A DNA stretch of 64,000 nt from Octopus sinensis (taxonomy: Eukaryota), in the NCBI RefSeq assembly GCF_006345805.1, contig NC_042998.1, positions 4,774,001 through 4,838,000 of the forward strand. Direction: 5' to 3'. The position numbers and the translations under genes are program-made. Within the stretch, counting starts at the first letter, position 1. Each line of letters starts with the position of its first letter. The notes under the pieces were generated by a model. That model saw only the letters and a program-made list of their open reading frames with translations. It was not told where the DNA came from and ran no database searches. Positions 10,853 through 63,400 of this stretch are shown in pieces.

Positions 10853-11286
10853 GGCGTAGGATTGGCTGTGTGGTAAGTAGCTTGCTAACCAACCACATGG
10901 TTCCGGGTTCATTTCCACTGCGTGGCATCTTAGGCAAGTGTCATCTGCTATAGCCCCGGGCCGACCAAAGCCTTGTGAGTGGATTTGGTAGACGGAAACT
11001 GAAAGAAGCCTGTCGTATATATGTATATATATATATAAGTGTCTGTGTATATGTTTGTGTGTCTGTGTTTGTCCCCCTAGCATTGCTTGACAACCGATGC
11101 TGGTGTGTTTACGTCCCCGTCACTTAGCGGTTCGGCAAAAGAAACCGATAGAATAAGTACTGGACTTACAATGAATAAGTCCCGGGGTCGATTTGTTCGA
11201 CTAAAGGCGGTGCTCCAGCATGGCCGCAATCAAATGACTGAAACAAGTAAAAGAGTAAAAGATTAAAAGAGTAAAGAGTAAGAGTA
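10853..11286 (+). mobile_element. SINE family 1, full length (reference for the empty Tx1 site)
   Basis: Contains uninterrupted tggtaagtagcttgctaaccaaccacatgg. Confidence 0.85.
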
Positions 11287-13248: not shown

Positions 13249-13761
13249 ATATATATATACACTCACATATGTGTGTATTTATGCATATAATGTATGGCAT
13301 TAAAATAAATACTTTTTGTTGCAGATTTTTTATAGGCGCAGGAGTGGCTGTATGGTAAGTAGCTTGCTAACCTCACTGACTGAAGAGTGACTTTGCTTAC
13401 CGTACTACGGTTTGGACGCGTTTTCTTCCCGGTAAGAATTTTGCTGTGTTGTTAATTGTTGAATTCCTACTACTGAAAATTTGTCTTTAAACGTTGCTGA
13501 ACTGTCTTGTTCTCCGGTTTTACCGGGGAATAATTGGATAATTTCTTACCGTTGAACTGTTAGCCATTGTGGCTTTTTATTTACGTGACTATATATAGTC
13601 CTGCCAGACTATTTTCGTGCCCCTCCCCCGAATGGGGGTGGGAATTGGAATTTTTGAACTGCTTTTTTGAACTACTTTGGAAGAAAAACTTTCTATAGGT
13701 TTCCCAGTTTTGTGGGAAACCAATATTCGTAATTTTTGTGTTGTCTAATTTCAACAGAATA

Positions 13762-15167
13762 ATGTCTGTTGAAATTATTCACGAAAGTAGTGCTCTTGAG
13801 GAGAGCAAATGTTAAAAAATTTTCTGTGGTAGCCGCAGTGGCTACCGAGAACATTGACATCGATGTCAATCAGCTCGTCGAGCTATTTAAAAGAATGCAA
13901 GAGGAGGGTGGTGATGTTAAAATATCACCCTCCGCCAGTATCGTGGAGACCGAGAAGCGGACCGTAGTGTTTAAAACTTTCTGTCCACAAAGCAGAAGGT
14001 TCAAACACTTTGAAAAAAGCACCATCGAGAAATGCCTGTCCCCAATTTGGAAGGACATCGTGTACGTCGCCAGGGGACGGGCATATGGCACTGTGGATGT
14101 CCGCTTCTCGGAGGAAGAAATGGCCCGCGGGCATTCTGTGAACCCCCTAAAAACCAAGGAGGTGGTACTTTTCCTAAGCTATAGGGGACGCAGGACGTCC
14201 CGGGTCAGGATTGTAGAAGCCCCGCCGGAAGTAGATCCGGTAGATGTAGTGGCCGCCCTGTTATATAAAAGGGCGGACAAAATAAAAATACTAGAAGTAA
14301 CATGCTCTACCCCTCGATTTTGGCTAGGGCGTAACATTAATATATTAATTCAAGGAACAGCGGAGGACCTGCAGCTCCTTCCTGAGAGGGTGCTCGTGGG
14401 CGAGAACGTAGCCCTCAGGGTACAGGTCGAAGGCCGAAAACCCCCCTGTTACGCCTGCGGCAAAAAGGGCCACATTCGTGTAGACTGTCCAGACAAGCAA
14501 AAGAAACCGCAGACACCAGGCCCCTCAGATAATAAAAAAGTCCCTACCCTTACAAACACACCTACCCCTACAAAAACAAAAAATCCCACTCCTGCTGTTA
14601 CGGTGCCAACCCCAAAACAGACTGAAGAAAAAACCCAGCCCTCGCACTCACAAACCCCTACACTATTAAAACCTCCCACCCCCCTAAAAACTGCGGCGCC
14701 TACCGAACAAACTATTGCTACCCCAGACGATACCATGGAGGTATCAGAGGGGGGATTTACACCAGTTCGTAAAAGAATTCGTGCAGCATCCCCTTCCACA
14801 TCCCCTACAAAAAATAATAAAAACAAAGACACACCACAGACACGGAAAAAAAAAATCCCGCTCAACTGGCCCAGAAAAAGAAGACAAAAAAGAAAATGAA
14901 CTCATATTAATTGAATTCGACACACAAGACAAATACATAAACGATATTGTGGTTCAGCATCAGTCAGCAAGACTGTACAACAAATACAAAGATCGAAATA
15001 GACACGCGTGGATTGCGGAAACAACGTTCAAACAATTAAAAGACAGACACCCAAACGCCATCCGGCATATCGCGAACTTGCCGGGCTATCTGAAGAAAGA
15101 GGAGAAAGAAGGGGCCCACAAACGTGTGGTGAGGTCGGCCCCCTCCTCTCCAACGAAATGTAAATAG
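13762..15167 (+). pseudogene. Tx1 ORF1 (gag-like; RRM-like region, CCHC knuckle, Pro/Thr-rich linker), apparently with two frameshifts
   Basis: CYACGKKGHIRVDC (CX2CX4HX4C) at 14447-14488. ATG 13762 is out of frame with the 13769-14899 ORF. The coding-like tail continues in another frame after the A10 run at 14846-14855 up to 15167. Confidence 0.75.
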
Positions 15168-15184
15168 AACTTTTACTTTTTGTA

Positions 15185-18100
15185 ATGGCTTCGCTTAACC
15201 TTGGTTGTTTAAATGTACGTGGTCTGAGTTCGAAGTGGAAGCAGGCTTGTTTCCTCGACGACCTCAGATCACATGATATACATGTGATGGTTGCTACAGA
15301 GACCAAGCTGGACAGCCTACAAACCTTCTCGCCTCTCCTGAATGGCTACGAGAAAATCATGTCTCCTGGCCAGACCGGAGGGCGAGGGGGCGTAGTGGTA
15401 CTGATCCGTAAAGACTTGGCTCTACAGACAAGTACAGTCTATGTAGACCCAGAAGGTGGGCTGGTCGTCCTTGATGTGACATACAGCAGTAAGGCCTTCA
15501 GGTTGATCGGACTCTATGCACCTTGTGCTAGAGGTTTCCAAACTGATTTTTATCGGCGCCTAGAGGACTTTCTCGTGACGTCGAAGACTTTAGTGATATT
15601 AGGGGACTTTAATGCTATCGTTGACGTACACATCGATAGCGTTGGCTCGATCTATAGGAAAGTGAACTCACGTCTCGTGGATCTGCTTAAGCGGTTTCAG
15701 CTAGCAGATCGTTACAGACTTGACCATCCGAACGTCCCAGAGTGGACCTGGATGAGTGCCGACGGAAGGTTCAAGTCTTATCTAGACAGGATAGTGATAA
15801 GAACTAGAGATAAGTCTAGTTTTAGTTGTCCACAGCTCGTCCAGGTGCCCTATACTGACCATAGAATGGTCACGTGTAGACTGGACATAGATAGCACACT
15901 TAAGATAGGAACCGGCTACTGGAAGCTGAACAAGTCTATTTTGACACGCGAGGCATACCGTAGCCGGATTAAGGTGTTAGTGCAGAGGTCGTTAACCGGA
16001 GCCGTGGTTAATAACCGGTGGTGGTTCACCCTCAAAAGAGCCATTCGATTCGAGTCCATTAGATTTAGTAAACAACTAAGACTAGATAGGGCTAGAATAG
16101 AAGGGCAACTAGTTAAGAACTTAGAGGAGGCGTTGAGGTTGGGCTCTGCATCTCACATTTTAGCGGCGAGAACGGCATTAGACCGTCACCTCAAAACCAA
16201 ACATGAGGGATGTAGAATCCGGGCTAAAGTACGAGCATTGGGCCGTGAGGGAATTAATGTTGCCGGATGGGCCCGTACGATAGAAACACAGCGTGGAAAC
16301 GATGCCACAATTGGGTCTCTTGTTGATGAAAACGGATGCACGATCAAGAACCGGGACGAGATGTGTGAGGCACTTCACAAGCACTTCGCCGAGTTGTTCG
16401 GGATGTGCGGGACGCTGGATCATGGTGAGGCCCTTAGGGACTTCCTGTCTGGTGGCCCGCGCCTCTCGACACGAGAGGCTGAGTGCTGTGAAGGGCCAAT
16501 CACAGCCGAGGAAGTAATCGAGGTGTTGGGCAAGTGCCCCGGGGAGAAGTCGCCGGGTCTCGATGGTCGGCCCTATGAATTTTATAGAAGTATGCCAGAC
16601 TTGTTCGGGCACCTGCTGGCTACCGTCTACGCCAACTGGCAGCAGAATGGGAGAATTTCCAAGTCTGCGAGCCGAGGGGCGGTGACGTTGATCAGGAAGG
16701 ACCCGAACAAGGGGGACGAGATAGGGAACTTCAGGCCCATAACTCTGTTAAACACAGAGTTAAAGATTCTGGCCAAGGTGCTAGCAAAAAGGTTGGCGCG
16801 GGTCGTGGACAAACTTGTCGGGGAAGCGCAAACGTGTGCTATCCCCGGCAGAACGATCCACGACAATCTCCACCTTATACGCTACTCCTTACAGAGGGTG
16901 GGGAAGCTTTCTGGCGCAGGGGGAGCACTGGTACATTTAGACCAGTCCAAAGCATTTGATAGGGTCGACCATCGGTACCTGGCGGCGGTCCTCGGAGAGG
17001 CTGGCCTAGGCCCGACCTTTCGAGGTTGGATCGCTGCTTTGTATAGCGACATCGAGTCTGTAGTCAAGGTGAACGGTTCCTTTTCGAAGCCGTTCAGGAT
17101 CGAGCGTTCAGTTCGTCAAGGGTGTCCCCTGTCCTCGCTCCTATACGTATTGGCTCTTGAGCCTTTGCTGCGGAAGTTGGAGGCACTAGGGGGCGCGCCG
17201 CATGATCTATGGTGTGGAAGAGGAGCTACGGCGTATGCGGATGACACCTCCATCATCGTGGCAGACGAAGGCCAGCTTCCAGTGGTGGAAGAGGCCATCA
17301 AAAGCTACGAGGCGGTGGCAGGAGCAAAGGTTAACAAGGACAAGTCGGTCGGTTTGCAACTCGGCACCTGGAGGGGCAAGCCGATGCCGTCCAATAACGT
17401 CGTAGGGCGTTGGACGGAAGGTCCTGTTAAGCTTTTCGGAGTCTGGTTCGGGCCACACCTCCAGATTGAGAAAAATTAGAGTGAGGTGGCCAACAAGGTG
17501 ACCGCTCTAACCCAGACCTGGTCTGGGCGGGCGTTATCCCTGCTAGGGAAGGCGGAGGTGGTGCAGATGTTTATAGCATCAGTAATCACCTACCGTCTGA
17601 CCGTGGTGCCTTGCCCCGATTTGTGGCTGAACAAGTTGGAGAGAATCCTTTTCCGATTTTTGTGGAAAGGAGGAAAGCCACTTGTAAAGCGCTCTGTCTG
17701 CTGCCAGAAACCGCTAAAGGGTGGGCTAGGGATGCCTTGGCTGAGGATGCGAAAACTCGCGTTAAGGTTGAGGCACCTCTGGCTTTACCTGGATGGAGAG
17801 CAGGTGTGGTCGCCGCACGTCCGGTTCTACCTTCCCCAGTTAACATCCCTAACGGACATCGGTGCATGGATCAAGCGGAGACCTAAACTGAGTGAATGGT
17901 ATTTGGAGTGCCGTCAGGCGCTCCAGCTACTATCTCGGGTGGGCAACGCCGGCAACAGGAGTTCCACCACGGATTTCTATAGCGGGTTAGTGGAGATTAA
18001 GTCCGAAGACGCCTTGGGGGAGACCCTGGGCTACGATGAAAATCAGTTGGTCAACCTGTTCCGAAGGACGTTCGGGCCGGGGTATCTGGATAATTACCAG

Positions 18101-18562
18101 AAATCCCTGGCCTGGCAGTGTTTCTGTGCGGCTTTACCTGTTCGCGACAAGCTGTCAAGGCACGGTAGTGCCGTCTCGCCGACATGCCCGCGATGTGAGC
18201 AGGATAGGGAGACCGTCTTGCACGCATTCGTGGAGTGTCCGGAGTTATCGGGACTGATAGCTTTTGTTGAACAACTGTTGTCAGTGATGGGAAGAATACA
18301 GCTATCAGCTGAGTCTATCATCGAGATTGTGCCGCCCCCTTTCCTTAACAGGGAAAGAAAGGGTTGTTTTTTCTGTGTAGTAGCCATACTGAAAGAAACG
18401 GTATGGAAGACGCGTACGAAAGGTATAGTGACAGGCACCTTTGTCTCCGGCCAGGGGTTGATTAACTTTTTTAGTTACCACCTCAGTAGCAAAATAATGC
18501 TGGAGAAGAACTGTCTGTCACAAGATATGTTTGTGAAAAGATGGAAGCCTGTGGCATACTAG
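15185..18562 (+). pseudogene. Tx1 ORF2: APE endonuclease, reverse transcriptase and C-terminal zinc finger; one in-frame TAG at 17477-17479
   Basis: APE motifs LNVRGL, ATETK, GDFNA, YLDRI, TDHRMV; RT motifs FRPITLLN, DQSKAFDRV, VRQGCPLS, YADD; CPRC...HAFVEC. ORFs 15185-17479 and 17486-18562 share one frame. Confidence 0.93.
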
Positions 18563-19879
18563 ATGGGTATGTTTGGCACCAGGTAAGTGTGACCGGATCA
18601 GAAAGTAAAGGTTCTACCCGGATGGCTGGGTGTCCGTCCTTCGACATGATCATTAATATTTTTAAACATTGCCTTCGTAAAATTCATTGTTTATAATCTT
18701 ATCTGTAATTTCATTCGAAAATTGTAACTGTGTTAAGCTACTTCACCCTTTATATTTGTCTGTCCTTGTTTGTCCCCTCTTTGTAAATGCCTAAATGGCA
18801 AATTATATGAAATAAAGTAGCTTGCTAACCAACCACATGGTTCCGGGTTCAGTCCCACTGCGTGGCATCTTGGGCGAATGTCTTCTGCTATAGCCCCGGG
18901 TCGACCAATGCTTTGTGAGTGGATTTGGTAGACGGAAACTGAAAGAAGCCCATCGTATATATGTGTGTGTGTGTGTTTGTCCCCTTAGCATTGCTTGACA
19001 ACCGATGCTGGTGTGTTTACGTCCCCATAACTTAGCGGTTCGGGAAAAGAGACCGATAGAATAAGTACTGGACTTACAAAGAATAAGTCCCGGGGTCGAT
19101 TTGCTCGACTAAAGGCGGTGCTCCAGCATGGCCGCAGTCAAATGACTGAATCAAGTAAAAGAGTGAGAGAGAGAGAGTTTTGTAATATTAAGTGCTTTTC
19201 GACCGAATTCATCAAAAGAGGAATGAGATCCAATGTTTTAGTACGTAGGAAACTAATGCAGGAGTGTGTATTAGCGGCACAAAAAGTGTCATAGGGGAAA
19301 AACCTTCCTAATGGTAGGATTGTTGAAGGCCAGAGAAAACAACGTTCGTTGCGAATAAAATATAAACAACTCAGTGCATCTGTAATATCAGCTTTAATTA
19401 AAATAAGTGAATATGCAAATGTACATATGAATAAACGAAACAAAAATTACTTCAACAATATAATATAAATGATATGTAAGTGTTAGTTGACCAAGAGTGA
19501 GGAGATCAGAGAAATATAAGTGGCTTAGAAGTAAAATGAAAAACGGAGAGAAAAATAGGAAAGAAGGGAAATTGCCAATTTCAAAGGGAAAATCTTACAA
19601 AATCTTGTATGTTTGCAACTCAAGTTAACTTTCTATCCGATGATTTTACGATAGTCTTCTTGCATCTAAGAATCGTTGTGATAAAGTTTCTGTGTAAATC
19701 TTTCCTAACTTCATCATGTCTCCGTTACAGATCGACTTGGGGCATCCTACAAACATTTCTTCATCCTAACTTCCACATACTCTACATTTTGCCGTCACTC
19801 TCCTTATATTCATATTTTCTTAAGCTGTTTGCAGTGCTTGGTTTTGGGGAGCTATAATAAGGCTCTCCCCCTTTTCAAT

Positions 19880-26164: not shown

Positions 26165-27509
26165 ATAGCAGAATATGGTATTAACTTGCTACTGTTATGA
26201 TAAAGAATTGCAATGATCTTCCAAATACAACTGATGATCGGAATATGCTACAGTAAACCATATCGGATAAATACATTCGAACTTATATATGTATGCATAT
26301 GCATATGTGTGCAGGGGATATATATATGAACGCACGTGCACACACACGTGCACACGCAGACACATACAGATATAGGTCACATGTAAATGTGTTCGAAGCA
26401 TCATGCTTTCATGCAAACATTGTGATTCTCTCAAAATTGATCGAAATTATTTTCTATTTTGAAACAAATATATCTAGTTACTGGACATGCCGAATATATC
26501 TTGGGAATATCTATGCAAGATAATTCAGATATGTATGCATGTTCGTAAAATGCAGTGTTTACATTAGCATATAATATTTAGATATTAAACATGCATGGTG
26601 TGAATGCACATACGCCAAAATTATAACTGCATGTATATGTATAAGTAATTGATATATGTATTTGTGTATATAAATATATACATAAACAATTGCAGCGTGA
26701 AAGGTGTTTATAAGCCATTTATATGTGTGTGTGTGTGTATACCTATTTACTGATAACTGTCGACACAAATATGACACGGTATCATAGTAGATATTAACAT
26801 ATTATTTTAGGCGCTCTGACTCTTGGTGCTCCGAGTTTCATCCTTGAGTGCACAGGATCCTCAGGCAATTTATGACTGAACATTGATGGGATTTGCTCAT
26901 TTATATATAGCTTCTTCAGTCAGAAGTTGAGTAGAAAGCGAGAAAATATGATAAAAGTTGAAAAAGAAAAGAAATTAAGAAAAGGGTAAAGAAATAGGGA
27001 AAAGTAAATATGGAAGAGCAAAATGAATAGGAACAGCAGAAACGAAAAAGAAGAAAAAGAAATAAAAAGGGATAAGAAAAAAGGGGACGAATTAAGATGG
27101 GTGGGAGTAGAAAATAGCAGATAAGTAAGCTTTGAGACTTGCAATATTCAAGGACGTAAATAGATGAATGAATAAGTAAATAAATAAAAATAATGACCTA
27201 GTTAAAACGAACAACATCGCATAAATCACAGTGTGAAGCAATCATTCCGCTTTCGAGATATCATATCAAAGTTAGATGCTTTTAAATATTATGTCCCCAC
27301 ACATAAACCTACTCCAAAAAGACGGTAATTGTAGAAACTCATCGCTATGTCCACAGAATAATAAATACCACCTGAATGAGCTCGCTTACAAATCCAAAGT
27401 TCAAAGGAATGGATATTTGCCACAAAATTGTATATCGAGCCCACGCAAAACGACTTTAAAGTTCCTTTCATGCAACACATTTATGTGATGACTAATAATA
27501 GTATGAGAA

Positions 27510-27739
27510 GGCGGCGAGCTGGCAGAACCGTTAGCACGCCGGGCGAAATGGTTTGCGGTATTTCGTCCGCCGCTACGTTCTGAGTTCAAATTCCACCGAG
27601 GCCGACTTTGCCTTTCATCCTTTCGGGGTCGATAAATTAAGTACCAGTTACGCAATGGGGTCGATGTAATCGACTTACTCCCTTTGTCTGTCTTTGTTTG
27701 TCCCCTCTATGTTTAGCCCCTTGTGGGTAATAAAAAACA
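27510..27739 (+). mobile_element. tRNA-derived SINE family 2 with Tx1-like tail
   Basis: Head ggcggcgagctggcagaa, B box agttcaaattcc, tail tttgtctgtctttgtttgtcccctct; 16-bp TSD AATAATAGTATGAGAA at 27494-27509 and 27740-27755. Confidence 0.88.
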
Positions 27740-29542
27740 AATAATAGTATGAGAAATTCTATATAATTACGAATGTATGTCTGGCACTTAAAGGCCAATG
27801 GTATAAGTAGTCCTACAACCAAGTAGAGTATTTTAGTAAAAAGGTAAGCGATCTTATTTAGTGGACAGGACAGAAAGTGTAATCAGTGCATAATCGAGAA
27901 ACTGCACATCTTGTCTGCAACTCAAATCCTAAATTGAAGAGAGGAGACACTTTCCTTTTGCCTATATGCGAGAAAGTTCAGTCCGCAAGTGTTTAAACAT
28001 AATTCTTTCGCAGATTACATCAAAAACTGTATGGCAGCAAATCTCACCGTGGATCCCTATTAATAATAGTCCTTTCCCTTCATTCTTAATCAATATCACT
28101 TAATCAATATCAATATCATAATCAATATCACTGTCAACTCCACTATTATCCCAAGTACCACTGTTATTGCTACTAACTCTCTCATCAGAGATTTGACTAC
28201 TATCCCTATCGCCATTATCGGAAACCACTTTAAGTAACAGAACATGAATAGTATACAATGTATACCACACACACACACACACATGTATGTATCTACCTAC
28301 CTACGTATGTATGTATATATGTTTATATATGCATCATGGATCTTGTTCTTGTTAATAAGTACGGACGGCCGTGGGATACATATATGCAGGAAAGAGCTTT
28401 TAATAATTCAGAAACTTAGCTTATATTTTGCAGTCGGCAACAATCTTCCTATTCAAAACTTTCGATATATCACCTTAAAGTAAGACACCTTTAAATATTT
28501 CCACACATTACTCACAAGTATCTTTGCATTCCTGCAGTTTATCTCATAACCATACCAAACGTACTTCATCTTCATTCTCGGACAAGTGCATCTTGTACTT
28601 ATCGGCAGCAAGCATTTGGAGAGAGTAATGCTTCTGAACGAACCACTTGATATTAGGCGTGAGATTTAAACAAGAAGTATTTTGTGATACAAGTCACTTT
28701 CCACTTACAGTATCCAACGCCAAAGCGACCGGGGAGTTCCTAGATTCGATCTTTCTCCAAATTTTTAAATGGTAAAGCTGTTATAAGTTTCTCCAACGAA
28801 GTTGTAGCAGCTCACTGATTACGAGATAACTGCGGCTGTTGACTGCTAAATGCCACATAAGGATGTTTCCTTCATAGATACTTTTTCTCTACCAGAGCGA
28901 GATGGTATTGAATGCTAGCAAGGTGTGTTGTGCCTTTCATTTTCTGTTTTTCTTTTGCGCTCATTTTCTTACAGAAAAGATAAAACCAGAGGGACAGAAA
29001 GGGAAGAAAGAGCTCCCGTACAAAACTAGTATTTTACTCTGAAACAACAAATGCCAAACTTTACCTCAGCAGATTAGAGCCCATAGCAGAACGATCCCCA
29101 CCAAGCACTTAATCTGATGTTCTAATAAATCCAGCACGTCGACCATCTACGGGTGTATGCGTGTGTGTATGTGTGTGTGGGGGAGCGTTTTTGTGTGTAG
29201 TTCTTTCAATCGGCAGAAAACGTCCCAAACCATTCCATTGACAAGAATTTTTATACATGCTTCTTGTTTGTCTAACGTTAAAACAAAAACATATAATGAT
29301 ATCAGGAATATCCAATCGAAATTGGAGAGTCGTCTGATAAACATTTTAATGTGTACCAATCTATCAACGCTTGCAAAAGAAAAAAGAGAATTAAAATAAA
29401 ATAACATATAAACATTTATGTAAAGAATAAGCACTCTTAGGTACTGCAAATATAGATAGCTATACATTAAATAATAAAGTAGACGAGTAGATATAAATAC
29501 ATACATACATACATACGTACATACATACATACATACATTGGC

Positions 29543-35495: not shown

Positions 35496-36475
35496 GATAC
35501 TGGTGCTGCTGGTGATTACACTGATGTGTTGTTGTAACTGTTGTTATTTTCTAATCAATATGGATTTCTTTCATTTTGCGATTATAAAATGACAATTCTG
35601 ACAAGTCGTGTGTTCTTTATTTTTCGTTTTACTGGAGTTATTTCGCTTGCTTTATTTTCGTTTTTATTTCAAGATAAGTTTGTTCTGAGTTTAAAGTAAC
35701 AGAAAGAGCAGGTTTCATTAAATATTTGCTCATAGATATTCGATAATAATTGAAATGTTACTAATTTTAAGATCGTACAATATGGAAGGTAATACTGATT
35801 ATAAATAATAATAATAATAATACAGAGTCAGCAAACATTTGCAACAGAACATTTTGAATAGACTAAACAAGTAAATGAAAAGAGTTCTAAAACACGTTCA
35901 TCATTTTCAGCAGCAACAACTCTAAGGTAAAAGGAATGAAATAGAATTTTTTAAAAATCTATAAGATATAAAAAAAAATATTTGCATAATAAACTTAATA
36001 CTATTGTAAAACACAAAAGGGTTTAAAACGTTAATATATATATATATGTCAGTATACTAATTGTAAGTAAAAAGAAAAGAAACTTATAGGTTATTAGAAA
36101 TGGCTGTAATTTTAAAATGAGAGATAGATGCCAAATGATAATGATAAAATTAAAGTAAACGCCTTTGAAGTTAGAGACATACAGAAAGGATTGTAAAGTG
36201 ACCCAGGCTGGTATTTAAAAAGAGGATATTTAAGGATTATAAGATTACAAGGCCAAACAAAGGAAAAGAATATTAACATTTAAATGATAAACTTTCAATT
36301 AAACACGGTCCAAAGTAGGATATTGTATCTGATCATGCTACATGCTAAAAATAGATATCCGATATTGTTATCCTTCTGATAATAATATACAGTTTTGATT
36401 TTTTAAAAGAACACAGAAAATAAGTGAACTTTTATTGATGTAGTCCGAGTACACCTTATCGGAAGGAGAACTATT

Positions 36476-36870
36476 CTTTTCTACTCTAGGCACAAGGCTC
36501 GGAGTTTTGGGGCAGGTGGCCAGTCGATTAGATCAAACCCAGTACGCAACTGGTACTTAATTTATTGACCCTGAAGGGATGAAAGGCAAAGTCGACCTCG
36601 GCGGAATTTGAACTCAGAACATAAAGACATAAAATACCTATTCCTTTACTACAAACAAGGGGCTAAACACTGAGAGGGCAAACAAGGACAGACAAAGGGA
36701 TTAAGTCGATTATATCGACCCCAGTGTGTAACTGGTACTTATTTAATCGACACCGAAAGGATGAAAGGCAAAGTCGACCTCGGTGGAATTTGAACTCAGA
36801 ACGTAGCGGCAGACAAAATACGGCTAAGCATTTCGCCCAGCGTGCTAATGTTTCTACCAGTTCCCCACCT
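36476..36870 (-). mobile_element. Nested SINE family 2 dimer: Tx1-tailed unit joined to a normal-tailed unit
   Basis: Junction at 36638/36639; outer TSD tcggaaggagaa(c/a)tatt at 36459-36475 and 36871-36887. Confidence 0.8.
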
Positions 36871-43262: not shown

Positions 43263-45534
43263 AAGACTGAAATAGATAGGCTCTATTTGCTAATAAGTTA
43301 ATGGGACAGGGATATATGAATGCAGAATACATTACCTGTGCTTCGATTTTGGGTTTGGAATAACAGTGATCTCAAAACAACGAATGTTTATAGTTAAAAT
43401 ATCAAAGAATTTGCTGGAACAAGGAAACAAAATTCAAGAATAGAAAAGAAAACTGCAGGATAAATAGTTGGGAAAGAAGAAAACACATGGCATATTCATA
43501 CAATAAAAGTGGAAAACGATAGTTTTGGCTGAGAGTTACAAATAAAGTATGGGAAGCTGAATCGCTAATAACCGACACTCAAGTACAAGCCAAAAGAATG
43601 GATTTAATAAAGACAAAAGTCTGGTAAAATTCCGTCGCTCAGCGGACAGGATGAACGTGTTAACCATATTCGAAGCAAGAATTGTAAGCTGACACAAATA
43701 AAGCATGAGCACAGACACAACTGCATCAGTAAAGGATTACATTAGGCTGTTACCTATGAGTGTTAATTTGAAATCAAGGAAAAGTACGGACGCGAGCAGA
43801 GGCCCTGTTGGAGAAAGATAAGTATAGAATTTCATGGAGTCTCTTTGTAGAACCTGATAATACTATAGCAAGGAAACTTGGTTCGTCAATGAAAGAGAGG
43901 AAGAAACAAGATCATTAGCTTTGTGATGCCATATGACAGTAGAGTTGATATATAAAAAAAGTGAGAAAATTTTCAAAATATCAGGTCCTAACCAGGGACA
44001 AGAAGAGATTGCAAAACAAAATTGGTAAAAATTGAGCCTTTGGTAAATGGTGCACTCGTCAGAATTTAAGCTGTTACCTCCAAAGCTGAAGAATATTGAA
44101 TTTGAGACAAACGATGTCGAAGTGCACATAAGTGACAGTGTGTATTTTGCAAGGATCCTGAGAAAGGTTTTTGAGATTTGAAGTGTTGTTTTCACCAAAA
44201 CGCAGGAATATATTCAGGGAAAAAATATAGTCTTTGAAATCTTTTATAACTCATTCAAAATTTTCATGATTTGTTGATGTAATAATATGTAATTAAACAA
44301 ACGGGTGTGCATACTGATACAGAAATTCACATCGAACAATTAGAAATTATCATCAGCATGTAAACATGATACATTAATAGAATCAAGCTGGACGTGTTGA
44401 ATTGCCGAATTCTTTCTTCAGAAAAAGGTGTGGTGAAATACAAATGTTATAGCAGTAAGTCTATTTTTAAAGGACGTATAAAAACAGCAGAAAGACAGAG
44501 GAAATAGGTTATAGCAAAGGTCAGATTAAAACAGAGATCAGCAGAAAAGCTTTGTGATCGAAAGCGAAGATACAAATGAAAGTGATTGAAAGAAAGAGAG
44601 GAGAGATGACTAGAGAAGAAAGAAAAACGATGAAGAGGCTTGTGTTAGAAGTAGACTAATGCCGACAAATCACAAATCTGTTTTTTTGACGAAGAAAGAA
44701 TATACAAGATGAAAGAGAATTGACTAAACAGAAAGAACAAGAAAGAAAGCACGAATGCAGTGGCTTTGGTACTGAATAACTAACCAAGCGTTTAGACCAG
44801 ACAAAACAGAAACCACGATAAAAGTATAAAAACAGGGACAGAAAACCAAGTAGATAGAAGGAAAAATCAATAAAAGGTAGGGGTTACAAAAAGATTATTA
44901 CATAACTATCAACATAAATTTAGTTGCTTTAAAATGAATGCGTGACATAAATTTCGCAGGCCCAGTGTACGCATGTGTGTGTGTGTGTTTCTGAGTGTGT
45001 GTGTGTGTGTGTATGAGTGTATGCATGTTTGTATGTATATATGTATGTGTATATATATATATATATATTAGGACGATGATTTTAGTTTGAAATCCAAGAG
45101 TCGATATTTTTTTGAAGATGATTGGAAAATATTGATCTATGGTAAAAGGTAATTCAATTTTACGTAATATTTGCGGAGATCCCATGCTGCATGGCCTGTA
45201 TGCACTATTGATAACATCTGTCAGTCCTAATAACAGACATGTTAGTTTTATAACAAAATGTTATTAACCAAGCGATAAGAAATATAACTAGCAAGTAATG
45301 TCAGATGATCTAAGGCAGTGAAGTGACAGAATTGCAAGCACGCCGGAAAAAAACTACTTAACCACATTTTCTCCGGCTTTACGTTCTGAGGCTGAATTTC
45401 ACCGAGGTTGACTTTGCCTTTCAGCATTTCAGGGTGGATAATTGTCGGGTACACAACAATTACAACTTTTGTCTCATGTGTTAACTTATCTCTCGCTCTG
45501 ATTATTTTGTGGTTAATATTCCTAGTCTTGTTCA

Positions 45535-45750
45535 GGTGGCGAGCTGGCAGAATCGTTAGCATACCGGACGAAATGCTTAGCGGCATTCCGTCCACTTTCA
45601 AATTCCGAGTTCAAGTTCCGCAGAGGTCGACTTTGCCTCTCATCCTTTGGAGGTGGATAAAATCAGCACCAGTTGAACACTGGGGTCGAAATAATGGGTT
45701 TACTCCCTTCCCTCGAAAGACCTGGCCTTGTGCCTGAATGTGAAACCAAT
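45535..45750 (+). mobile_element. SINE family 2 with normal tail (diverged); partial copy at ~45330-45440
   Basis: ggtggcgagctggcagaatcgttagc ... ggccttgtgcct. Confidence 0.75.
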
Positions 45751-46384
45751 ATTATGATTATTGTTTTTCTTTTTATTGCCTTTCACTTAGAAATTTTCCG
45801 AGAAAGCTCGGTGGCGATATGACATTTATCCTGAATAGCATTACGCACATTTACAATGGACTTCATACATAGTCATCCAGAGTAGGCGGTCATATTCCGC
45901 AGCTGCTGCTTCCGATCTAAAACGTTAGTATCATTTTTAAGAAAGGTTACATGTCAAAGAATCTTGTCCGTAGTCTATTGCAACACCAGTAACCTTTATA
46001 AGAGTTTTTTTCTTTTTTAAGTGTTTACTCGAGTAGTAATTTGAAGTAAAAATTCATATAAAGATTTTACTACTCCATATCATTCATCATTGAGCTTCAG
46101 TAACAATTGAATCATGGGTGAACTGCAATGCAGCTGTTAAAGGGACTGGAGCTAAACGTACTACAATCACAATACGCGGCATTTGATTGTTGCGACGCAG
46201 ATTCCAAAGATTGAGCATTTTCGAACAAGTCTTATAATTCAGCATTCTAATATTATGACCATATCAGTACCATTTTAGAAACGATAGATAAAATCAGGTC
46301 GAAATATTTACAGGACAGAGTAATGATTATATGTTGTGTAAGATATAGGGAAAACATATATAAATTTCTAGACAAGTATACATA

Positions 46385-48330: not shown

Positions 48331-48369
48331 CACCACACACACACACACATACACGCACACATACACACC

Positions 48370-48598
48370 TATTTCTTTACTACCCACAAGGGGCTAAACA
48401 CAGAGGGGAACAAACAAGGACAGACAAAAGGATTAAGTCGATTACATCGACCCCAGTGCGTAACTGGTACTTAATTTATCGACCCCGAAAGGATGAAAGG
48501 CAAAGTCGACCTCGGCGGAATTTGAACAAAGAACGTAACGGCAGACGAAATACGGCTACGCGTTTCGCCCGCATGCTAACGTTTCTGCCAGCTCTCCG

Positions 48599-48599
<1 letters not shown>
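48370..48599 (-). mobile_element. SINE family 2 with Tx1-like tail inside a (TG)n tract (duplicate at 49731-49961)
   Basis: Tail ends ...gtagtaaagaaata|GGT. Confidence 0.85.
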
Positions 48600-49642: not shown

Positions 49643-49716
<74 letters not shown>

Positions 49717-49960
49717 CACACATACACACCTATTTCTTTACTACCCACAAGGGGCTAAACACAGAGGGGAACAAACAAGGACAGACAAAAGGATTAAGTC
49801 GATTACATCGACCCCAGTGCGTAACTGGTACTTAATTTATCGACCCCGAAAGGATGAAAGGCAAAGTCGACCTCGGCGGAATTTGAACAAAGAACGTAAC
49901 GGCAGACGAAATACGGCTACGCGTTTCGCCCGGCATGCTAACGTTTCTGCCAGCTCTCCG

Positions 49961-49991
<31 letters not shown>

Positions 49992-55569: not shown

Positions 55570-55800
55570 TTTGCAAATCTGAGAGAGAATGAATGTATTG
55601 TAGAATAACAGACCCAGCTGGTATATATTGGTTACAAAGTGTTGGCATAAGGCCTACAAATATAGGGGAAGGATAGTTATTTTATCGAACTCGAAAGGAT
55701 AAAAGGCAAACTTGGGCTCGTCTGAATTCAGAACGTAAAGACAGACGAAATGCTGTTAAGTATTTTGTTCGGTGTGCTAACGATTATGCTAGCTTACCTC
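55570..55800 (-). mobile_element. Diverged SINE family 2 relic (further relics at ~60830-61030 + and ~62290-62460 -)
   Basis: cgaaaggataaaaggcaaa...gaattcagaacgtaaagacagacgaaat. Confidence 0.55.
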
Positions 55801-59904: not shown

Positions 59905-60421
59905 CGAATGGATGAACGGTAAAGTCGATCTCGGCGGAATTTGAACTCAGAACGTAAAGACAGGCGAAATACAGCTAAGCATTTCGCCCAGCGTGCTAAC
60001 GTTTCTTATTTCTTTATTGCCCACAAGGGGCTAAACATAGAGGGGACAAACAAGGACAGGCAAAGGGATTAAGTCGATTACATCGACCCCAGTGCGTAAA
60101 TGGTACTTAATTTATAGACCCCGAAAGGATGAAAGGCAAAGTCGACCTCGACGGAATTTGAACTCAGAAAGTTGAGGCAGACGAAATACCTATTTCTTTA
60201 CTACCCACAAGGGGCTAAACACAGAGAGGGCAAACAAGGACAGACAAACGCATTAAGTCGATTAGATCGGCCCCAGTGTGTAACTGGTACTTATTTAATC
60301 GACCCCGAAAGGATGAAAGGCAAAGTCGACCTCGGAAGAATTTGAACTCAGAACGTAACGGCAGACGAAATACCACTGAGCATTTCGCCCGGCATGCTAG
60401 CATTTCTGCCAGCTCGCCGCC
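59905..60421 (-). mobile_element. Triple nested/tandem SINE family 2 array with two Tx1-like tails
   Basis: Tail junctions at 60006/60007 (aaata|AGAAAC) and 60190/60191 (aaata|GGTATT). Confidence 0.85.
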
Positions 60422-63400
60422 TAAAATGCTGGTATAATTACGAATATTAGAAAACTCTAATACTGTCTTGCCAATAAATGTCAACCCCAAAACCAGAAAC
60501 AATATTATTTACTTTAATCCTTCAACATCCGCTTGATTGATTTTATTCTTCATTACACAAGTTTGAACTTTCTGAAGAAAAAAAAATTGTTCATTGGTTT
60601 CTCTATCAATAACTGATCGATCTCAGAATCAATTCCTAAATCTTCTCAGGTTGTGATCAGATTTAAATTATACTTACACCCCCTCTAATCAATCTTAAGT
60701 ATAAGTGATATATAGGAAGATTTATCTTCATTGGCACTGAATATGCCATCTTTTGCTTTTGTTAATTTCTTTTGACGCAACCATTGTATACCATTTCTAT
60801 TGTGCCCGTTGCAATAAAGTCGCGTGTGTAAAAGACTGAAATGTCCGACAAAATTCCTTGTGGTGTTTGTACCGTCTCTTTACATTCCGAATTCAAATTC
60901 TGCTGAGGTCACCTTTGCTTTTTTATTCCTTTGATATCTTCAGTTAAATACTGGGTTGATGGCATCAAGTTACCCATTTCACGTAAAAACTAATTTAGGC
61001 CCTGTGCCTAAATTAGAAGGCATTAGAATTATTATTGCAGTAACTATCATAAAAGGTAGATTGCAAGAAAAAAAATTAGGTATTTAGTAGGTTAGTATGC
61101 GTTTTTTTTCTTTCTTTTTTTAATATCTTCTAAGCTCAGATCACATCATGATCAATTTTACTGTCATACTTTTGGGTCGTTTTCTCGGATTGATATAATA
61201 AACTACAGAAACATTTGTTACCTTGTTCCTGTGGCTATTTTATGAACAGTTATTAAGTAGCATTATTGCCATCATCGTCAGCAATAACAACAAAAGCTGT
61301 AGTAACATCATAACCACCAACATTATCATTACGCTGTGATTTTAAATTATTAGCGGAATGTCATTAATGAATCATGGTAAGATAAAACCACTTCAAATTT
61401 CAAGAACTTTCCTGAGGGTCCTTGCAATATTAATAATGACAGGTTTTTGAAAATTAGCAATCTTGGTTATGACGGCGAATTTTGAAGTTTTTCCATTTTG
61501 TTTTTATATTTATATCTTCTCATTCCTCTTATTATAATAGGTATTATAGACATTTTCTCTATTTAACTAGATCTTTATAACTATCAATATTTTCTCACTC
61601 CTTGAAGGCAGAGTTGTTTTCATAAGGAATGAGGAAATCAATTAGCTAGCATGAATTAATTTCTTCAACAATTAGTGGTATATCCAGTTACTCTACTGTT
61701 ATATGATCCGTTTACATAGAAACGTTCAGCAGGATTTACTTATGGCATTCTTCATTATTATTTCTAGTGAATATTCATAGGATTACATATTCATTTTCTT
61801 TCTTGGTTATGCATGTTAATTTATCTAATTTCGTTCAGTTATCTTTATAGTACGGTATCTTTTATAATTCACTCTCATCATTCGTTTTATTGATTCATCC
61901 GTCTTTCGATGTTACTCGAACTTATACGTTGTTCTTTATACACTATCATTATCTTTTCAATGTTTCCTTTTTTATTTTAGTTTTTACCTATTCAAGTTTT
62001 CTATCTAGTTACTTAGTGAGCAGGGAAATCAATACTCAAATGACCCCCCACCTCAAGGCCGCCTAGATAGGTAGGAGATTGATATCTTCAAGCATGAGGC
62101 CTTCTCCAATGTCTATAACAGAGTAAAGTTTGCAGAAGACACATAAAGAGCCAAGTGGTGATGTTAAATCGGGTAACGGGTTGAGTCTGCATTCCAAGTA
62201 TACAAGAGCTAGTTTTGAATTCAGAAATTAAAAAAGCCGAAACAAATACCAAAAATGCTTCATCAGCAATGTAGTCTTACCATTCCATCAATTCAACAAG
62301 TATTCTTGTTGGATTGCAGAAACTGGTCCCATTTTATCAATACCGAAAGGATGAAAGGCGAATTTGATCTCGAATTTCAACACAGAGTACAGAGGGGAGA
62401 AAAATATCTCGGAAAGTAAAGTATTATGTCCAATGCTGAAGCAACTCAACAAATTCGTCACCTATTGTCATTATGTATTGTGTTTGGGTTAGTTGATTCA
62501 AACCCAGCACAAAAATAACTGGGCTGTGTTAAAGTCCTTGATAGATATCTGCAGAGCATGAAGAAACCCAAGTCTTCAGGGAAGCTGGTTGACATTTGAG
62601 TTAATAGAAGGATGAAACAGGTATGTTTCTGGTATGGTAGTGGCATGAAATTCTGAGATTAAATAACGAGGAAAAGTAATTTACATGTACTGTGCTTGAT
62701 GGGAAATAAAGAGCACATACGTCCCGTGCATATAATGTATCAAGTTGGTTTATTATTTGGAAGCATAACTGTTATAAAATGAAAGTGAACTAAGTGCGTG
62801 CAAAAATTATATTTTAATTTGTAATTTTGAGTTTTTTTCATTCATATAAAAACACACAGAGACGTGGTAACTTTTGTGTGCTTGCGTACGTGCGTGTATG
62901 TGTATTACCATACTTTTAAATTCATCTATTGGATACATTTGCATGTAAGTTATTTTCTAGATAATTATCTTGAGAAAGCGCTCAGGCCTAGAAGAAGCTG
63001 TTTAGATTTGAATTGTTAATTATTGTTGCAAAATGTTTGTATAGAGAAAATAAAAACTGTTTGAGGGTGAGTTAATTTATTTAAGACGGCAAATGAAAGA
63101 TTTGTTTGTTGATACAAAGATAGATGAAATTCAGTGAGAATACTTAGCCACGAGGTACTCGTCAGTTAACGAAATTAGTGTGTCGAGTGAGGGTATGGCA
63201 AAATGTGTGCGATAGTATTTTGATATGATAGCTATAAAGATATTTTACTAAACTGAATTCTTGGTCTTCAATAAATTTACCGCAGATGGTAATTGAAAAA
63301 ATTATGAGAAATTATAAAACCGATACAAACGTTTCTGCAGATGACACAGTCTCTGGGATCAGAGCTGTGTTAAAGACTTTGACAGATATCTGCATAGCAA

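What the first reader, a model, noticed from the sequence alone, without database searches (positions are those of the whole stretch)
18755..18814. SINE family 2 tail matches the 3' UTR of the Tx1 LINE: candidate LINE-SINE partnership
Seen: Tx1 18755-18780 (TTTGTCTGTCCTTGTTTGTCCCCTCT) equals the consensus start of the tail of the SINE2 copies at 27510, 36639, 48370/49731, 60007 and 60191. Both then form a small hairpin with a 5-nt loop (Tx1 TGCC-TAAAT-GGCA; SINE GCCC-CTTGT-GGGC/T) before an A-rich end. Other SINE2 copies (36476, 45535) have a different tail. Established: 'stringent' SINEs share 3' ends and stem-loops with the LINE that mobilises them, mostly L2/CR1/RTE; Tx1 partners are rarely reported. 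Inference: a SINE2 subfamily captured a tail from this Tx1 family or a relative and uses its machinery.
Basis: partly seen in the sequence, partly recalled or inferred. Interest (0 to 1): 0.85.

Follow-up and report, generated by a model that had tools for sequence, protein, structure and literature searches.

The report
Octopus SINE shares LINE 3' tail
The last 60 bases of a near-intact L1/Tx1-type LINE in this octopus-like window are homologous to the 3' tail of an abundant CORE-type SINE, and related LINEs in other octopods carry the same tail, so this LINE lineage very probably supplies the machinery that copies the SINE.

Summary
The 26-mer at 18755-18780 occurs, with at most 3 mismatches, only at this LINE's 3' end and in four SINE2 tails (0 expected by chance); blastn adds two more SINE2 tails. 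A perfect 16-bp target-site duplication places the LINE at 13373-18814, so the shared 60 nt are its true 3' terminus.

Related LINE copies in Octopus sinensis, Argonauta hians and cephalopod-like contigs from metagenome and read-archive assemblies carry a homologous tail at the end of their 3' UTRs, so the tail is native to the LINE. However, the distal half of the SINE tail (CTTGT loop, AATAAAGAAATA end) matches those relatives at 80-87% and the window LINE at only 59%. The donor or partner is therefore probably a sister family, not this copy's family.

The small hairpin shows compensatory changes across 13 LINE and SINE tails. The "different" SINE2 tails carry the same pentaloop on another stem.

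ORF2 belongs to the L1 superfamily. Tx1 is likely from the literature on mollusc LINEs but was not tested by phylogeny.

Tail sharing is well known in general but rare for L1-superfamily LINEs. I found no published octopus case, so I class this as a new member of a known kind.

The parts
13357..13372 (+). Left copy of the 16-bp target-site duplication (AAGTAGCTTGCTAACC). It lies inside the 5' part of a SINE1 copy (13332-13372).
13373..18814 (+). Full-length L1-superfamily (probably Tx1-type) LINE of 5442 bp, inserted into a SINE1 copy.
   Evidence: Bounded by the duplication. Pfam finds zf-CCHC in ORF1, and Exo_endo_phos, RVT_1 and zf-RVT in ORF2. ORF2 aligns end to end with human L1 ORF2p, E about 1e-54.
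13769..14899 (+). ORF1 with a CCHC zinc knuckle. The true start codon was not determined.
15185..18562 (+). ORF2 (endonuclease, reverse transcriptase, C-terminal zinc-binding domain). It is one reading frame with a single in-frame stop at 17480-17482.
18563..18814 (+). 3' UTR of the LINE. Only its last ~60-70 nt resemble SINE2.
   Evidence: blastn of the UTR against the window
18755..18814 (+). Shared 3' tail module: the 26-mer (18755-18780), a spacer, the hairpin TGCC-TAAAT-GGCA (18788-18800) and the A-rich end ...GAAATA.
18815..18830 (+). Right copy of the 16-bp target-site duplication. SINE1 continues from here to about 19170.
27510..27739 (+). Full-length SINE2 (CORE-type) with the type-A tail at 27683-27739. 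It is flanked by the 16-bp duplication AATAATAGTATGAGAA (27494-27509 and 27740-27755).
36471..36870 (-). Dimeric SINE2. The left monomer (36645-36870) carries an internal type-A tail. The right, 5'-truncated monomer (36471-36640) carries a type-B tail. One 12-bp duplication, TTCTCCTTCCGA, flanks the whole dimer.
48373..48599 (-). SINE2 with a type-A tail, inside a (TG)n tract. It is one of two copies in a 1.36-kb tandem duplication.
49734..49961 (-). SINE2 with a type-A tail; the duplicate of the copy at 48373-48599.
60010..60422 (-). Two adjacent SINE2 units (60194-60422 full length; 60010-60190 5'-truncated), both with type-A tails. They are joined at the same junction as in the dimer at 36471-36870.
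45534..45760 (+). Divergent SINE2 with a type-B tail (hairpin GGC-CTTGT-GCC at 45724-45734).

Best explanation
The window carries a young, nearly intact LINE of the L1 superfamily, most likely the L1-Tx1 group. The 3' end of its 3' UTR is a conserved module of about 60 nt: a pyrimidine-rich block (CTGTCCTTG...GTCCCCTCT), a small GC-clamped hairpin with a 5-nt loop, and an A-rich terminus with no poly(A) tail. The abundant octopus CORE-type SINE ('SINE2') ends in a homologous module.

The most likely mechanism is the classical 'stringent' one. The LINE's ORF2 protein recognises this 3' stem-loop and tail on RNA and starts target-primed reverse transcription there. A pol III SINE transcript that carries the same tail is then copied in trans.

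The SINE tail was acquired from this LINE lineage. The donor, and the likely present partner, is a sister family with a CTTGT loop and an AATAAAGAAAT end, as seen in O. sinensis and Argonauta, rather than the exact family of the window copy.

Shown here: homology, co-terminality, conservation of the tail across LINE relatives, covariation in the hairpin, and duplications of similar length. Inferred: RNA recognition and trans-mobilisation.
For: 1. The 26-mer is limited to the LINE end and SINE2 tails, with 0 expected by chance. The full-tail alignment is 46/60 identical and scores far above shuffles.
2. A perfect 16-bp duplication puts the tail inside the retrotransposed unit and exactly at its 3' end.
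3. Related LINE copies (50-70% amino-acid identity over the C-terminal 358 residues of ORF2) end their 3' UTRs in a homologous tail:
   - L002, O. sinensis...TTGTCCCCCTCTATGTTTGGGCCCTTGTGGCTAATAAAGAAAT
   - L003, Argonauta hians
   - L011
   - L005
   - L134: TGTC-CTAGT-GACA followed by AAATAAATGAAAAT
   - L133: partial, the contig ends first
   The SINE tail is 81%, 76% and 70% identical to L002, L003 and L011 overall, and 87%, 82% and 80% in the distal half.
4. Hairpin pairing across 13 LINE and SINE tails: 84.6% of cells are paired, against 62.5% when shuffled (0/500 shuffles reach it). Three of the 4 pairs change on both sides, in 10 cells against 3.8 expected (0/500). Every slid register gives at most 48% paired.
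5. Duplication lengths agree: LINE 16 bp, SINE2 16 bp, SINE2 dimer 12 bp. The LINE and the monomeric SINE2 both lie after a T and their duplications start with AA, which is L1-like.
6. ORF2 has the L1-type architecture, and L1-Tx1 LINEs are reported as recently active in O. vulgaris (PMC13282606).
Against: - Only one copy of the window LINE family was available, so family-level conservation of its TAAAT loop is not shown.
- The distal half of the SINE tail is only 59% identical to the window LINE, so this particular family may not mobilise SINE2.
- The hairpin alone is thermodynamically unremarkable (z-scores from -1.15 to +1.06).
- I aligned the hairpins by hand, and the sequences are few and related.
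- The duplication and target evidence rests on three elements.
- SINE2 copies in the window are only 88-92% identical to the reference copy at 27505, so they are older than the near-intact LINE copy.
- No experimental data exist.
Confidence: 0.7

Rival explanations
1. The transfer ran the other way, or the match is a chimera. On this view, this LINE copy (or its master) picked up a SINE2 tail fragment by 3' transduction or template switching, so the tail is not a functional part of the LINE.
For: Only the last ~60 nt of the 252-nt UTR match SINE2. SINE2 is very abundant, so fragments of it lie close to many loci.
Against: Homologous tails close the 3' UTRs of LINE relatives that have diverged to 50-70% amino-acid identity, in O. 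sinensis, Argonauta and other assemblies, while the rest of their UTRs differ. Independent capture at the same position in each lineage is implausible. None of these LINE UTRs contains any SINE2 body sequence upstream of the tail.
Confidence: 0.05
2. The tail homology is a relic. SINE2 took a tail from an L1-Tx1 LINE long ago, but its bulk amplification was driven by another LINE clade that is abundant in octopus (RTE-BovB, CR1 or Dong-R4), or by relaxed recognition of the A-rich end.
For: RTE, CR1 and Dong-R4 are abundant and recently active in octopus (PMC13282606, PMC9115989). Some SINE2 copies carry a different tail (type B). The dimer at 36471-36870 moved on the type-B tail while its type-A tail was internal.
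Against: The type-B tail carries the same CTTGT pentaloop on a covarying stem, which points to the same recognition system. The type-A tail is kept intact and terminal in independent copies, one with a perfect 16-bp duplication. Duplications of 12-16 bp fit an L1-type endonuclease. No 3' end of an RTE, CR1 or Dong element was available here for comparison.
Confidence: 0.2
3. The resemblance is chance similarity between pyrimidine-rich, low-complexity sequences.
For: The 26-mer is T/C/G-rich. A partial match (23 nt, 91%) occurs inside SINE1 next to a (TG)n tract.
Against: There were 0 of 100 shuffles with any match and 0 of 2000 shuffles reaching the alignment score. The match is co-terminal in both elements and recurs in LINE relatives from other species.
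Confidence: 0.01

Closest known systems
UnaL2 / UnaSINE1 of the eel (L2 clade; Kajikawa and Okada 2002, cited in PMC3747384)
   Same: A CORE-type, tRNA-promoter SINE shares the LINE's 3' tail. The tail holds a conserved small stem-loop followed by a short terminal repeat or A/T-rich end. There is no poly(A). This is the model case of 'stringent' recognition.
   Different: The LINE clade differs: L2 there, L1 superfamily here. The tail sequence is unrelated. The eel system was proven by retrotransposition assay, whereas here everything rests on sequence.
LINE1-1_ZM / ZmSINE2 and ZmSINE3 in maize, and L1-1_CR / SINEX-3_CR in Chlamydomonas (Ohshima 2012; PMC3747384)
   Same: An L1-clade LINE shares a 3' end with tRNA SINEs, with a hairpin that shows compensatory changes. 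These are the three L1-tail pairs among the 58 SINE/LINE pairs listed in that survey.
   Different: Those hosts are plants and an alga. Those elements end in poly(A) or poly(T). The pair here is in an animal, has an A-rich non-homopolymer end, and the SINE has a CORE body.
SINEU / Tx1-Mar in crocodilians (Kojima 2015; PMC4494074)
   Same: A SINE attributed to LINEs of the Tx1 clade.
   Different: That pairing was inferred from a shared target preference (Mariner-N4_AMi) and shared snRNA-derived 5' ends, not from a shared 3' tail. No target specificity is evident in this window.
MIR / L2 and other CORE-SINEs with L2, CR1 or RTE tails; octopus OR1 and OR2 CORE-SINEs (Ohshima and Okada 1994, cited in PMC4824008 and PMC4758252)
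   Same: The SINE has the same modular build: a pol III head, a CORE-like body and an exchangeable LINE-derived tail. Octopus CORE-SINEs have been known since 1994.
   Different: The papers I could read name no LINE partner for octopus CORE-SINEs, and the L1/Tx1 tail type is not among the CORE-SINE tails listed in PMC3747384.

Membership tests
Stringent-type LINE/SINE pair (shared 3' tail) | The 3' end of the SINE is homologous to, and co-terminal with, the 3' end of the LINE's 3' UTR. | tested here: met
   26/26 identical, then 46/60 over the whole tail. Both elements end in GAAATA just before their target-site duplications.
Stringent-type LINE/SINE pair (shared 3' tail) | The tail is a conserved, native feature of the LINE lineage. 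| tested here: met
   Homologous tails in L002, L003, L011, L005 and L134, and a partial one in L133.
Stringent-type LINE/SINE pair (shared 3' tail) | A conserved stem-loop in the tail, supported by compensatory changes. | tested here: met
   84.6% of cells paired against 62.5% shuffled. Three of 4 pairs change on both sides. Slid registers give at most 48%. Caveats: a 4-bp stem, 13 hand-aligned sequences, and no thermodynamic signal.
Stringent-type LINE/SINE pair (shared 3' tail) | The LINE and the SINE have the same duplication length and target-site signature. | tested here: inconclusive
   LINE 16 bp, SINE2 16 bp, SINE2 dimer 12 bp. The LINE and the monomeric SINE2 insert at T|AA. Only three elements.
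Stringent-type LINE/SINE pair (shared 3' tail) | Tail-dependent trans-mobilisation of the SINE RNA by the LINE proteins. | not testable with these tools
   Needs a retrotransposition or RNA-binding assay.
Tx1 clade of non-LTR retrotransposons (L1 superfamily) | ORF2 with an APE endonuclease, a reverse transcriptase and a C-terminal zinc-binding motif, plus a separate ORF1. | tested here: met
   Exo_endo_phos, RVT_1 and zf-RVT in ORF2; zf-CCHC in ORF1. This feature does not separate Tx1 from L1.
Tx1 clade of non-LTR retrotransposons (L1 superfamily) | ORF2 is closer to L1-group ORF2 than to other clades. | tested here: met
   Human L1 ORF2p matches at E 9.5e-55 over residues 6-722; R2 proteins match at E about 1e-18 over the RT domain only.
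Tx1 clade of non-LTR retrotransposons (L1 superfamily) | An RT-domain phylogeny places the element inside Tx1 rather than L1 proper. | not tested
   No named Tx1 reference sequence could be obtained; the hits carry no clade names. Indirect support: L1-Tx1 is the only L1-like group listed for O. vulgaris (PMC13282606), and Tx1 is the L1-like clade named among mollusc LINE clades (PMC10294476).
Tx1 clade of non-LTR retrotransposons (L1 superfamily) | Target-sequence-specific insertion (common in Tx1, but not universal). | tested here: inconclusive
   The one copy lies in SINE1, but five other SINE1 copies in the window are uninterrupted at that site. The relatives L003 and L011 are followed by (ATT)n.
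CORE-SINE (tRNA-Core) | A tRNA-related head with pol III A and B boxes. | tested here: inconclusive
   A B-box-like GAGTTCAAATTCC is present, but ARAGORN and Rfam find no tRNA.
CORE-SINE (tRNA-Core) | A central CORE domain. | tested here: inconclusive
   TTTCATCCTTTCGGGGTCGATAAATTAAGTACC resembles the MIR core as I recall it. This is a comparison by eye, and no reference library was available. It fits the report that tRNA-Core is a main octopus SINE class (PMC8967140).

The most novel reading that the evidence does not exclude
Octopod CORE-SINEs of both tail types are mobilised by L1-Tx1 LINEs through a conserved 3' stem-loop with a CUUGU-type pentaloop. On this reading the octopus-specific SINE burst (about 12% of the O. 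vulgaris genome) was driven by an L1-superfamily LINE that uses stringent 3' recognition. As far as I could find, that would be the first tail-sharing LINE/SINE pair of the L1 superfamily in an animal.
Probability: 0.45. Interest if true: 0.65.

Novelty: new member of a known kind. Interest (0 to 1): 0.5.

Why it matters
SINEs are among the largest components of octopus genomes: about 11.6% of the O. vulgaris genome (PMC13282606) and about 40% of the repeat content (PMC8967140). None of the octopus repeat papers I could read names the LINE that moves them. This finding names a concrete candidate lineage and a concrete RNA element.

It also bears on an open question raised by Ohshima (PMC3747384). 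[quoted passage not shown] That pattern led to the idea that sequence-specific 3' recognition is ancestral in the L1 clade and was lost in mammals and flowering plants. An animal L1/Tx1 lineage with a conserved tail and a SINE that shares it would be a new data point, and an experimentally tractable one.

Tried and rejected
- **Clade naming through databases.** I ran three word-indexed protein searches, one exhaustive HMMER search and two cluster look-ups. The relatives returned are mostly unnamed and none carries a Tx1 or L1 label, so Tx1 against L1 remains unresolved by my own tests.
- **Fetching more LINE copies.** Protein-guided scans of metagenome contigs and of GTDB genomes confirmed no relative.
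- **Exact-pattern scan of metagenome contigs.** A 15-base tail pattern gave 120 or more hits, but none carried the extended tail, so they are chance matches.
- **Uninformative loci.** In L004, L012 and L001 the contig ends before the tail or the sequence does not reach it; L006-L010 are a broken LINE fragment. One look-up found no record.
- **RNA searches.** Rfam found nothing in the LINE tail, SINE1 or SINE2, and ARAGORN found no tRNA.
- **Folding.** The hairpin is no more stable than shuffled sequence, so its support comes from covariation only.
- **Rejected explanations.** Chance similarity, and capture of a SINE fragment by a single LINE copy (see the rival explanations).

Full report
**1. 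The observation**

The 26-mer TTTGTCTGTCCTTGTTTGTCCCCTCT is at 18755-18780. With up to 3 mismatches it occurs five times in the 64-kb window, against none in 100 dinucleotide-preserving shuffles. One site is the LINE. The other four are SINE2 tails at 27683+, 36671-, 60039- and 60223-. blastn with the whole LINE 3' UTR adds the SINE2 tails at 48398-48428(-) and 49759-49789(-) and hits nothing else.

- LINE: TGCC-TAAAT-GGCA at 18788-18800.
- SINE2: GCCC-CTTGT-GGGC/T.

A global alignment of the 58-nt SINE2 tail with the last 60 nt of the LINE gives 46/60 identities. The score is 30, against a shuffled mean of 3.5 and a maximum of 12 in 2000 shuffles.

**2. What the LINE is and where it ends**

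The element interrupts a copy of a second SINE, 'SINE1'. SINE1 positions 1-41 lie at 13332-13372 and positions 26-413 at 18815-19170. The 16 overlapping bases, AAGTAGCTTGCTAACC, are a perfect target-site duplication at 13357-13372 and 18815-18830.

The LINE is therefore 13373-18814, or 5442 bp, and is full length. The shared 60 nt are its genuine 3' terminus. It ends in ...GAAATA and has no poly(A) tail.

- ORF1 (13769-14899) has a CCHC zinc knuckle.
- ORF2 (15185-18562) has Exo_endo_phos, RVT_1 and zf-RVT domains. It is a single frame with one in-frame stop at 17480-17482.
- ORF2 aligns from residue 6 to residue 722 with human L1 ORF2p (E 9.5e-55). R2 proteins match only the RT domain (E about 1e-18).

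The element therefore belongs to the L1 superfamily. I could not obtain a named Tx1 reference sequence, so I did not test Tx1 against L1. Two papers make Tx1 the likely label. A curated O. vulgaris annotation lists L1-Tx1 as the only L1-like LINE group, with 13 families and 421 recent insertions (PMC13282606). A phylogeny-based survey of mollusc LINEs names Tx1 among the clades it found (PMC10294476).

**3. What SINE2 is**

SINE2 is about 230 bp long. It has a B-box-like GAGTTCAAATTCC and a central stretch, TTTCATCCTTTCGGGGTCGATAAATTAAGTACC, that resembles the MIR/CORE domain as I recall it. This fits two things in the literature: the octopus CORE-SINEs OR1 and OR2 described in 1994 (cited in PMC4824008 and PMC4758252), and the report that tRNA-Core is a main octopus SINE class (PMC8967140). 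ARAGORN and Rfam see no tRNA in it, so the tRNA origin of the head is an inference.

The copy at 27510-27739 is flanked by a perfect 16-bp duplication, AATAATAGTATGAGAA.

**4. Is the tail native to the LINE?**

This was the key test. I searched with the C-terminal 358 residues of ORF2 and found relatives at 50-70% identity. They include annotated proteins of Octopus sinensis and Argonauta hians, plus contigs in metagenome and read-archive assemblies that evidently carry cephalopod DNA. I then read the DNA downstream of their stop codons.

| Locus | Source | 3' end of the UTR |
|---|---|---|
| L002 | O. sinensis | ...GGCTGTATTGTCCCCCTCTATGTTTGGGCCCTTGTGGCTAATAAAGAAAT |
| L003 | A. hians | ...CTCTGTATCGTCCCCTCTATGTTTTTGCCCTTGTGGCTAATAAAAGAAATAA, then ATT repeats |
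| L011 | JGI metagenome | ...CTGTCCTTGCCTTTTGTATCGTCCTTAATGTTTCCGGGCCCTTGTGGCCAATAAAAGAAATC, then (ATT)n |
| L005 | ENA metagenome | a degenerate version |
| L134 | Logan read-archive assembly | ...TTGCCTGTCCTTTGTAATGTACC...TGTC-CTAGT-GACA-AATAAATGAAAAT |
| L133 | ENA metagenome | TGTGTCCTTGTCTTTCACCCC, then the contig ends |

The rest of these UTRs differs between sub-lineages. The module is thus an old, conserved 3' terminal feature of this LINE lineage. That excludes the idea that one LINE copy merely picked up a SINE fragment.

**5. Which LINE is the partner?**

The proximal half of the SINE2 tail (the 26-mer) is identical to the window LINE. The distal half, ATGTTTAGCCCCTTGTGGGCAATAAAGAAATA, compares as follows:

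| LINE | Identity to the distal half of the SINE2 tail |
|---|---|
| L002 | 87% |
| L003 | 82% |
| L011 | 80% |
| Window LINE | 59% |

The window LINE and L134 share a different distal type, a [stem]AAAT(A/T)A(A/T)ATGAAA(A)T end, so the window copy's distal half is typical of its lineage and not a private mutation. The donor, and the likely present partner, is therefore a sister family that combines both halves.

**6. The hairpin**

I aligned the hairpin region of 6 LINE tails and 7 SINE2 tails and counted pairs for a 4-bp stem.

- 84.6% of cells form standard pairs, against 62.5% after shuffling (0 of 500 shuffles reach it).
- Three of the four pairs change on both sides: G-C/C-G, C-G/G-C/U-A, and G-U/G-C/U-A. 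That is 10 cells, against 3.8 expected (0 of 500).
- All slid registers give at most 48% paired.

Folding alone gives no signal; z-scores run from -1.15 to +1.06. In the window LINE, L002 and L003 the minimum-energy fold extends the stem by pairing the U-rich stretch upstream with the A-rich end.

The support is real but modest. The stem is short, the sequences are few and related, and I chose the alignment by hand.

The SINE2 copies with a 'different tail' (36476-, 45534+, 55674-) carry GGC-CTT(G/A)T-GCC, which is the same pentaloop on another stem. This suggests a second tail drawn from the same LINE group.

**7. Mechanism**

The best reading is the classical stringent LINE/SINE partnership. 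ORF2p recognises the 3' stem-loop and tail, and target-primed reverse transcription starts there. The SINE RNA uses the same signal in trans.

Two features are consistent with this. Duplication lengths are similar: 16 bp for the LINE, 16 bp for a SINE2 monomer and 12 bp for a SINE2 dimer. The LINE and the monomeric SINE2 both insert at T|AA. Three elements cannot settle the point.

The main rival, which I put at about 0.2, is that the homology is a relic and another abundant clade (RTE, CR1 or Dong-R4) drove the amplification.

**8. Comparison with what is known, and novelty**

Tail sharing between SINEs and LINEs is textbook for the L2, CR1 and RTE clades. For the L1 clade it is rare. Ohshima's survey found 3 such SINEs among 58 pairs, despite more than 800 L1-clade LINEs in the database, and all three are from maize or Chlamydomonas (PMC3747384). 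The one Tx1-SINE link I found, SINEU with Tx1-Mar, rests on shared target preference and not on a shared tail (PMC4494074).

The octopus repeat papers I could read list L1-Tx1 LINEs and tRNA-Core SINEs but do not discuss tails or partners (PMC13282606, PMC8967140, PMC9115989). Repbase and Dfam notes could not be checked.

I therefore class this as a new member of a known kind, of moderate interest. It names a candidate driver for the large octopus SINE load and offers an animal test case for stringent recognition in the L1 superfamily.

Noticed in passing
window 36471-36870 (-) and 60010-60422 (-): SINE2 occurs as a dimer: a full monomer joined to a monomer that is 5'-truncated at about position 52. 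The junction, ...AAATA|GGTATTT..., is the same at both loci. The dimer at 36471-36870 is flanked by a single 12-bp duplication (TTCTCCTTCCGA), so it moved as one unit on the type-B tail of its right monomer.
   Followed up: partly
window 36489-36499 (-), 45724-45734 (+), 55644-55654 (-): The second SINE2 tail type carries the hairpin GGC-CTT(G/A)T-GCC. This is the same pentaloop as in the type-A tail and the LINE relatives, on a different stem. No matching LINE 3' end was found among the sequences fetched.
   Followed up: partly
window 11054-11076, and the equivalent sites in the other SINE1 copies (for example 18973-18985): Just after its internal (TA)n(TG)n tract, SINE1 (about 420 bp) contains GTCTGTGTTTGTCCCC. 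This resembles part of the 26-mer (23 nt, 91%). It could be chance in TG-rich sequence, or the remnant of an internalised tail.
   Followed up: no
window 48334-48571 and 49695-49932: A tandem segmental duplication with a period of 1361 bp. The two 238-nt stretches compared are 100% identical, and each unit carries a SINE2 and a SINE1 copy.
   Followed up: no
L003 7190-7205; L011 2020-2105: Two related LINE copies are followed directly by (ATT)n, with more than 25 units in L011. This could be a slippage-generated terminal repeat or a microsatellite target preference, as in some Tx1 families.
   Followed up: no
Proteins P0034 and P0184-P0193 (Patella caerulea): The limpet relatives of ORF2 (about 32% identity) form a cluster of 11 near-identical proteins. 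Their accession numbers are closely spaced (KAK6191799-KAK6191823) and they lie on one chromosome. That suggests a tandem array of elements, as expected for a target-specific Tx1-type LINE.
   Followed up: no
Proteins P0008-P0014; loci L004, L005, L011, L012, L133: Cephalopod-type LINE fragments turn up in environmental metagenome assemblies. One of them is in a genome bin labelled Herbaspirillum sp. (P0012). This is most likely host or prey DNA contaminating those assemblies.
   Followed up: no
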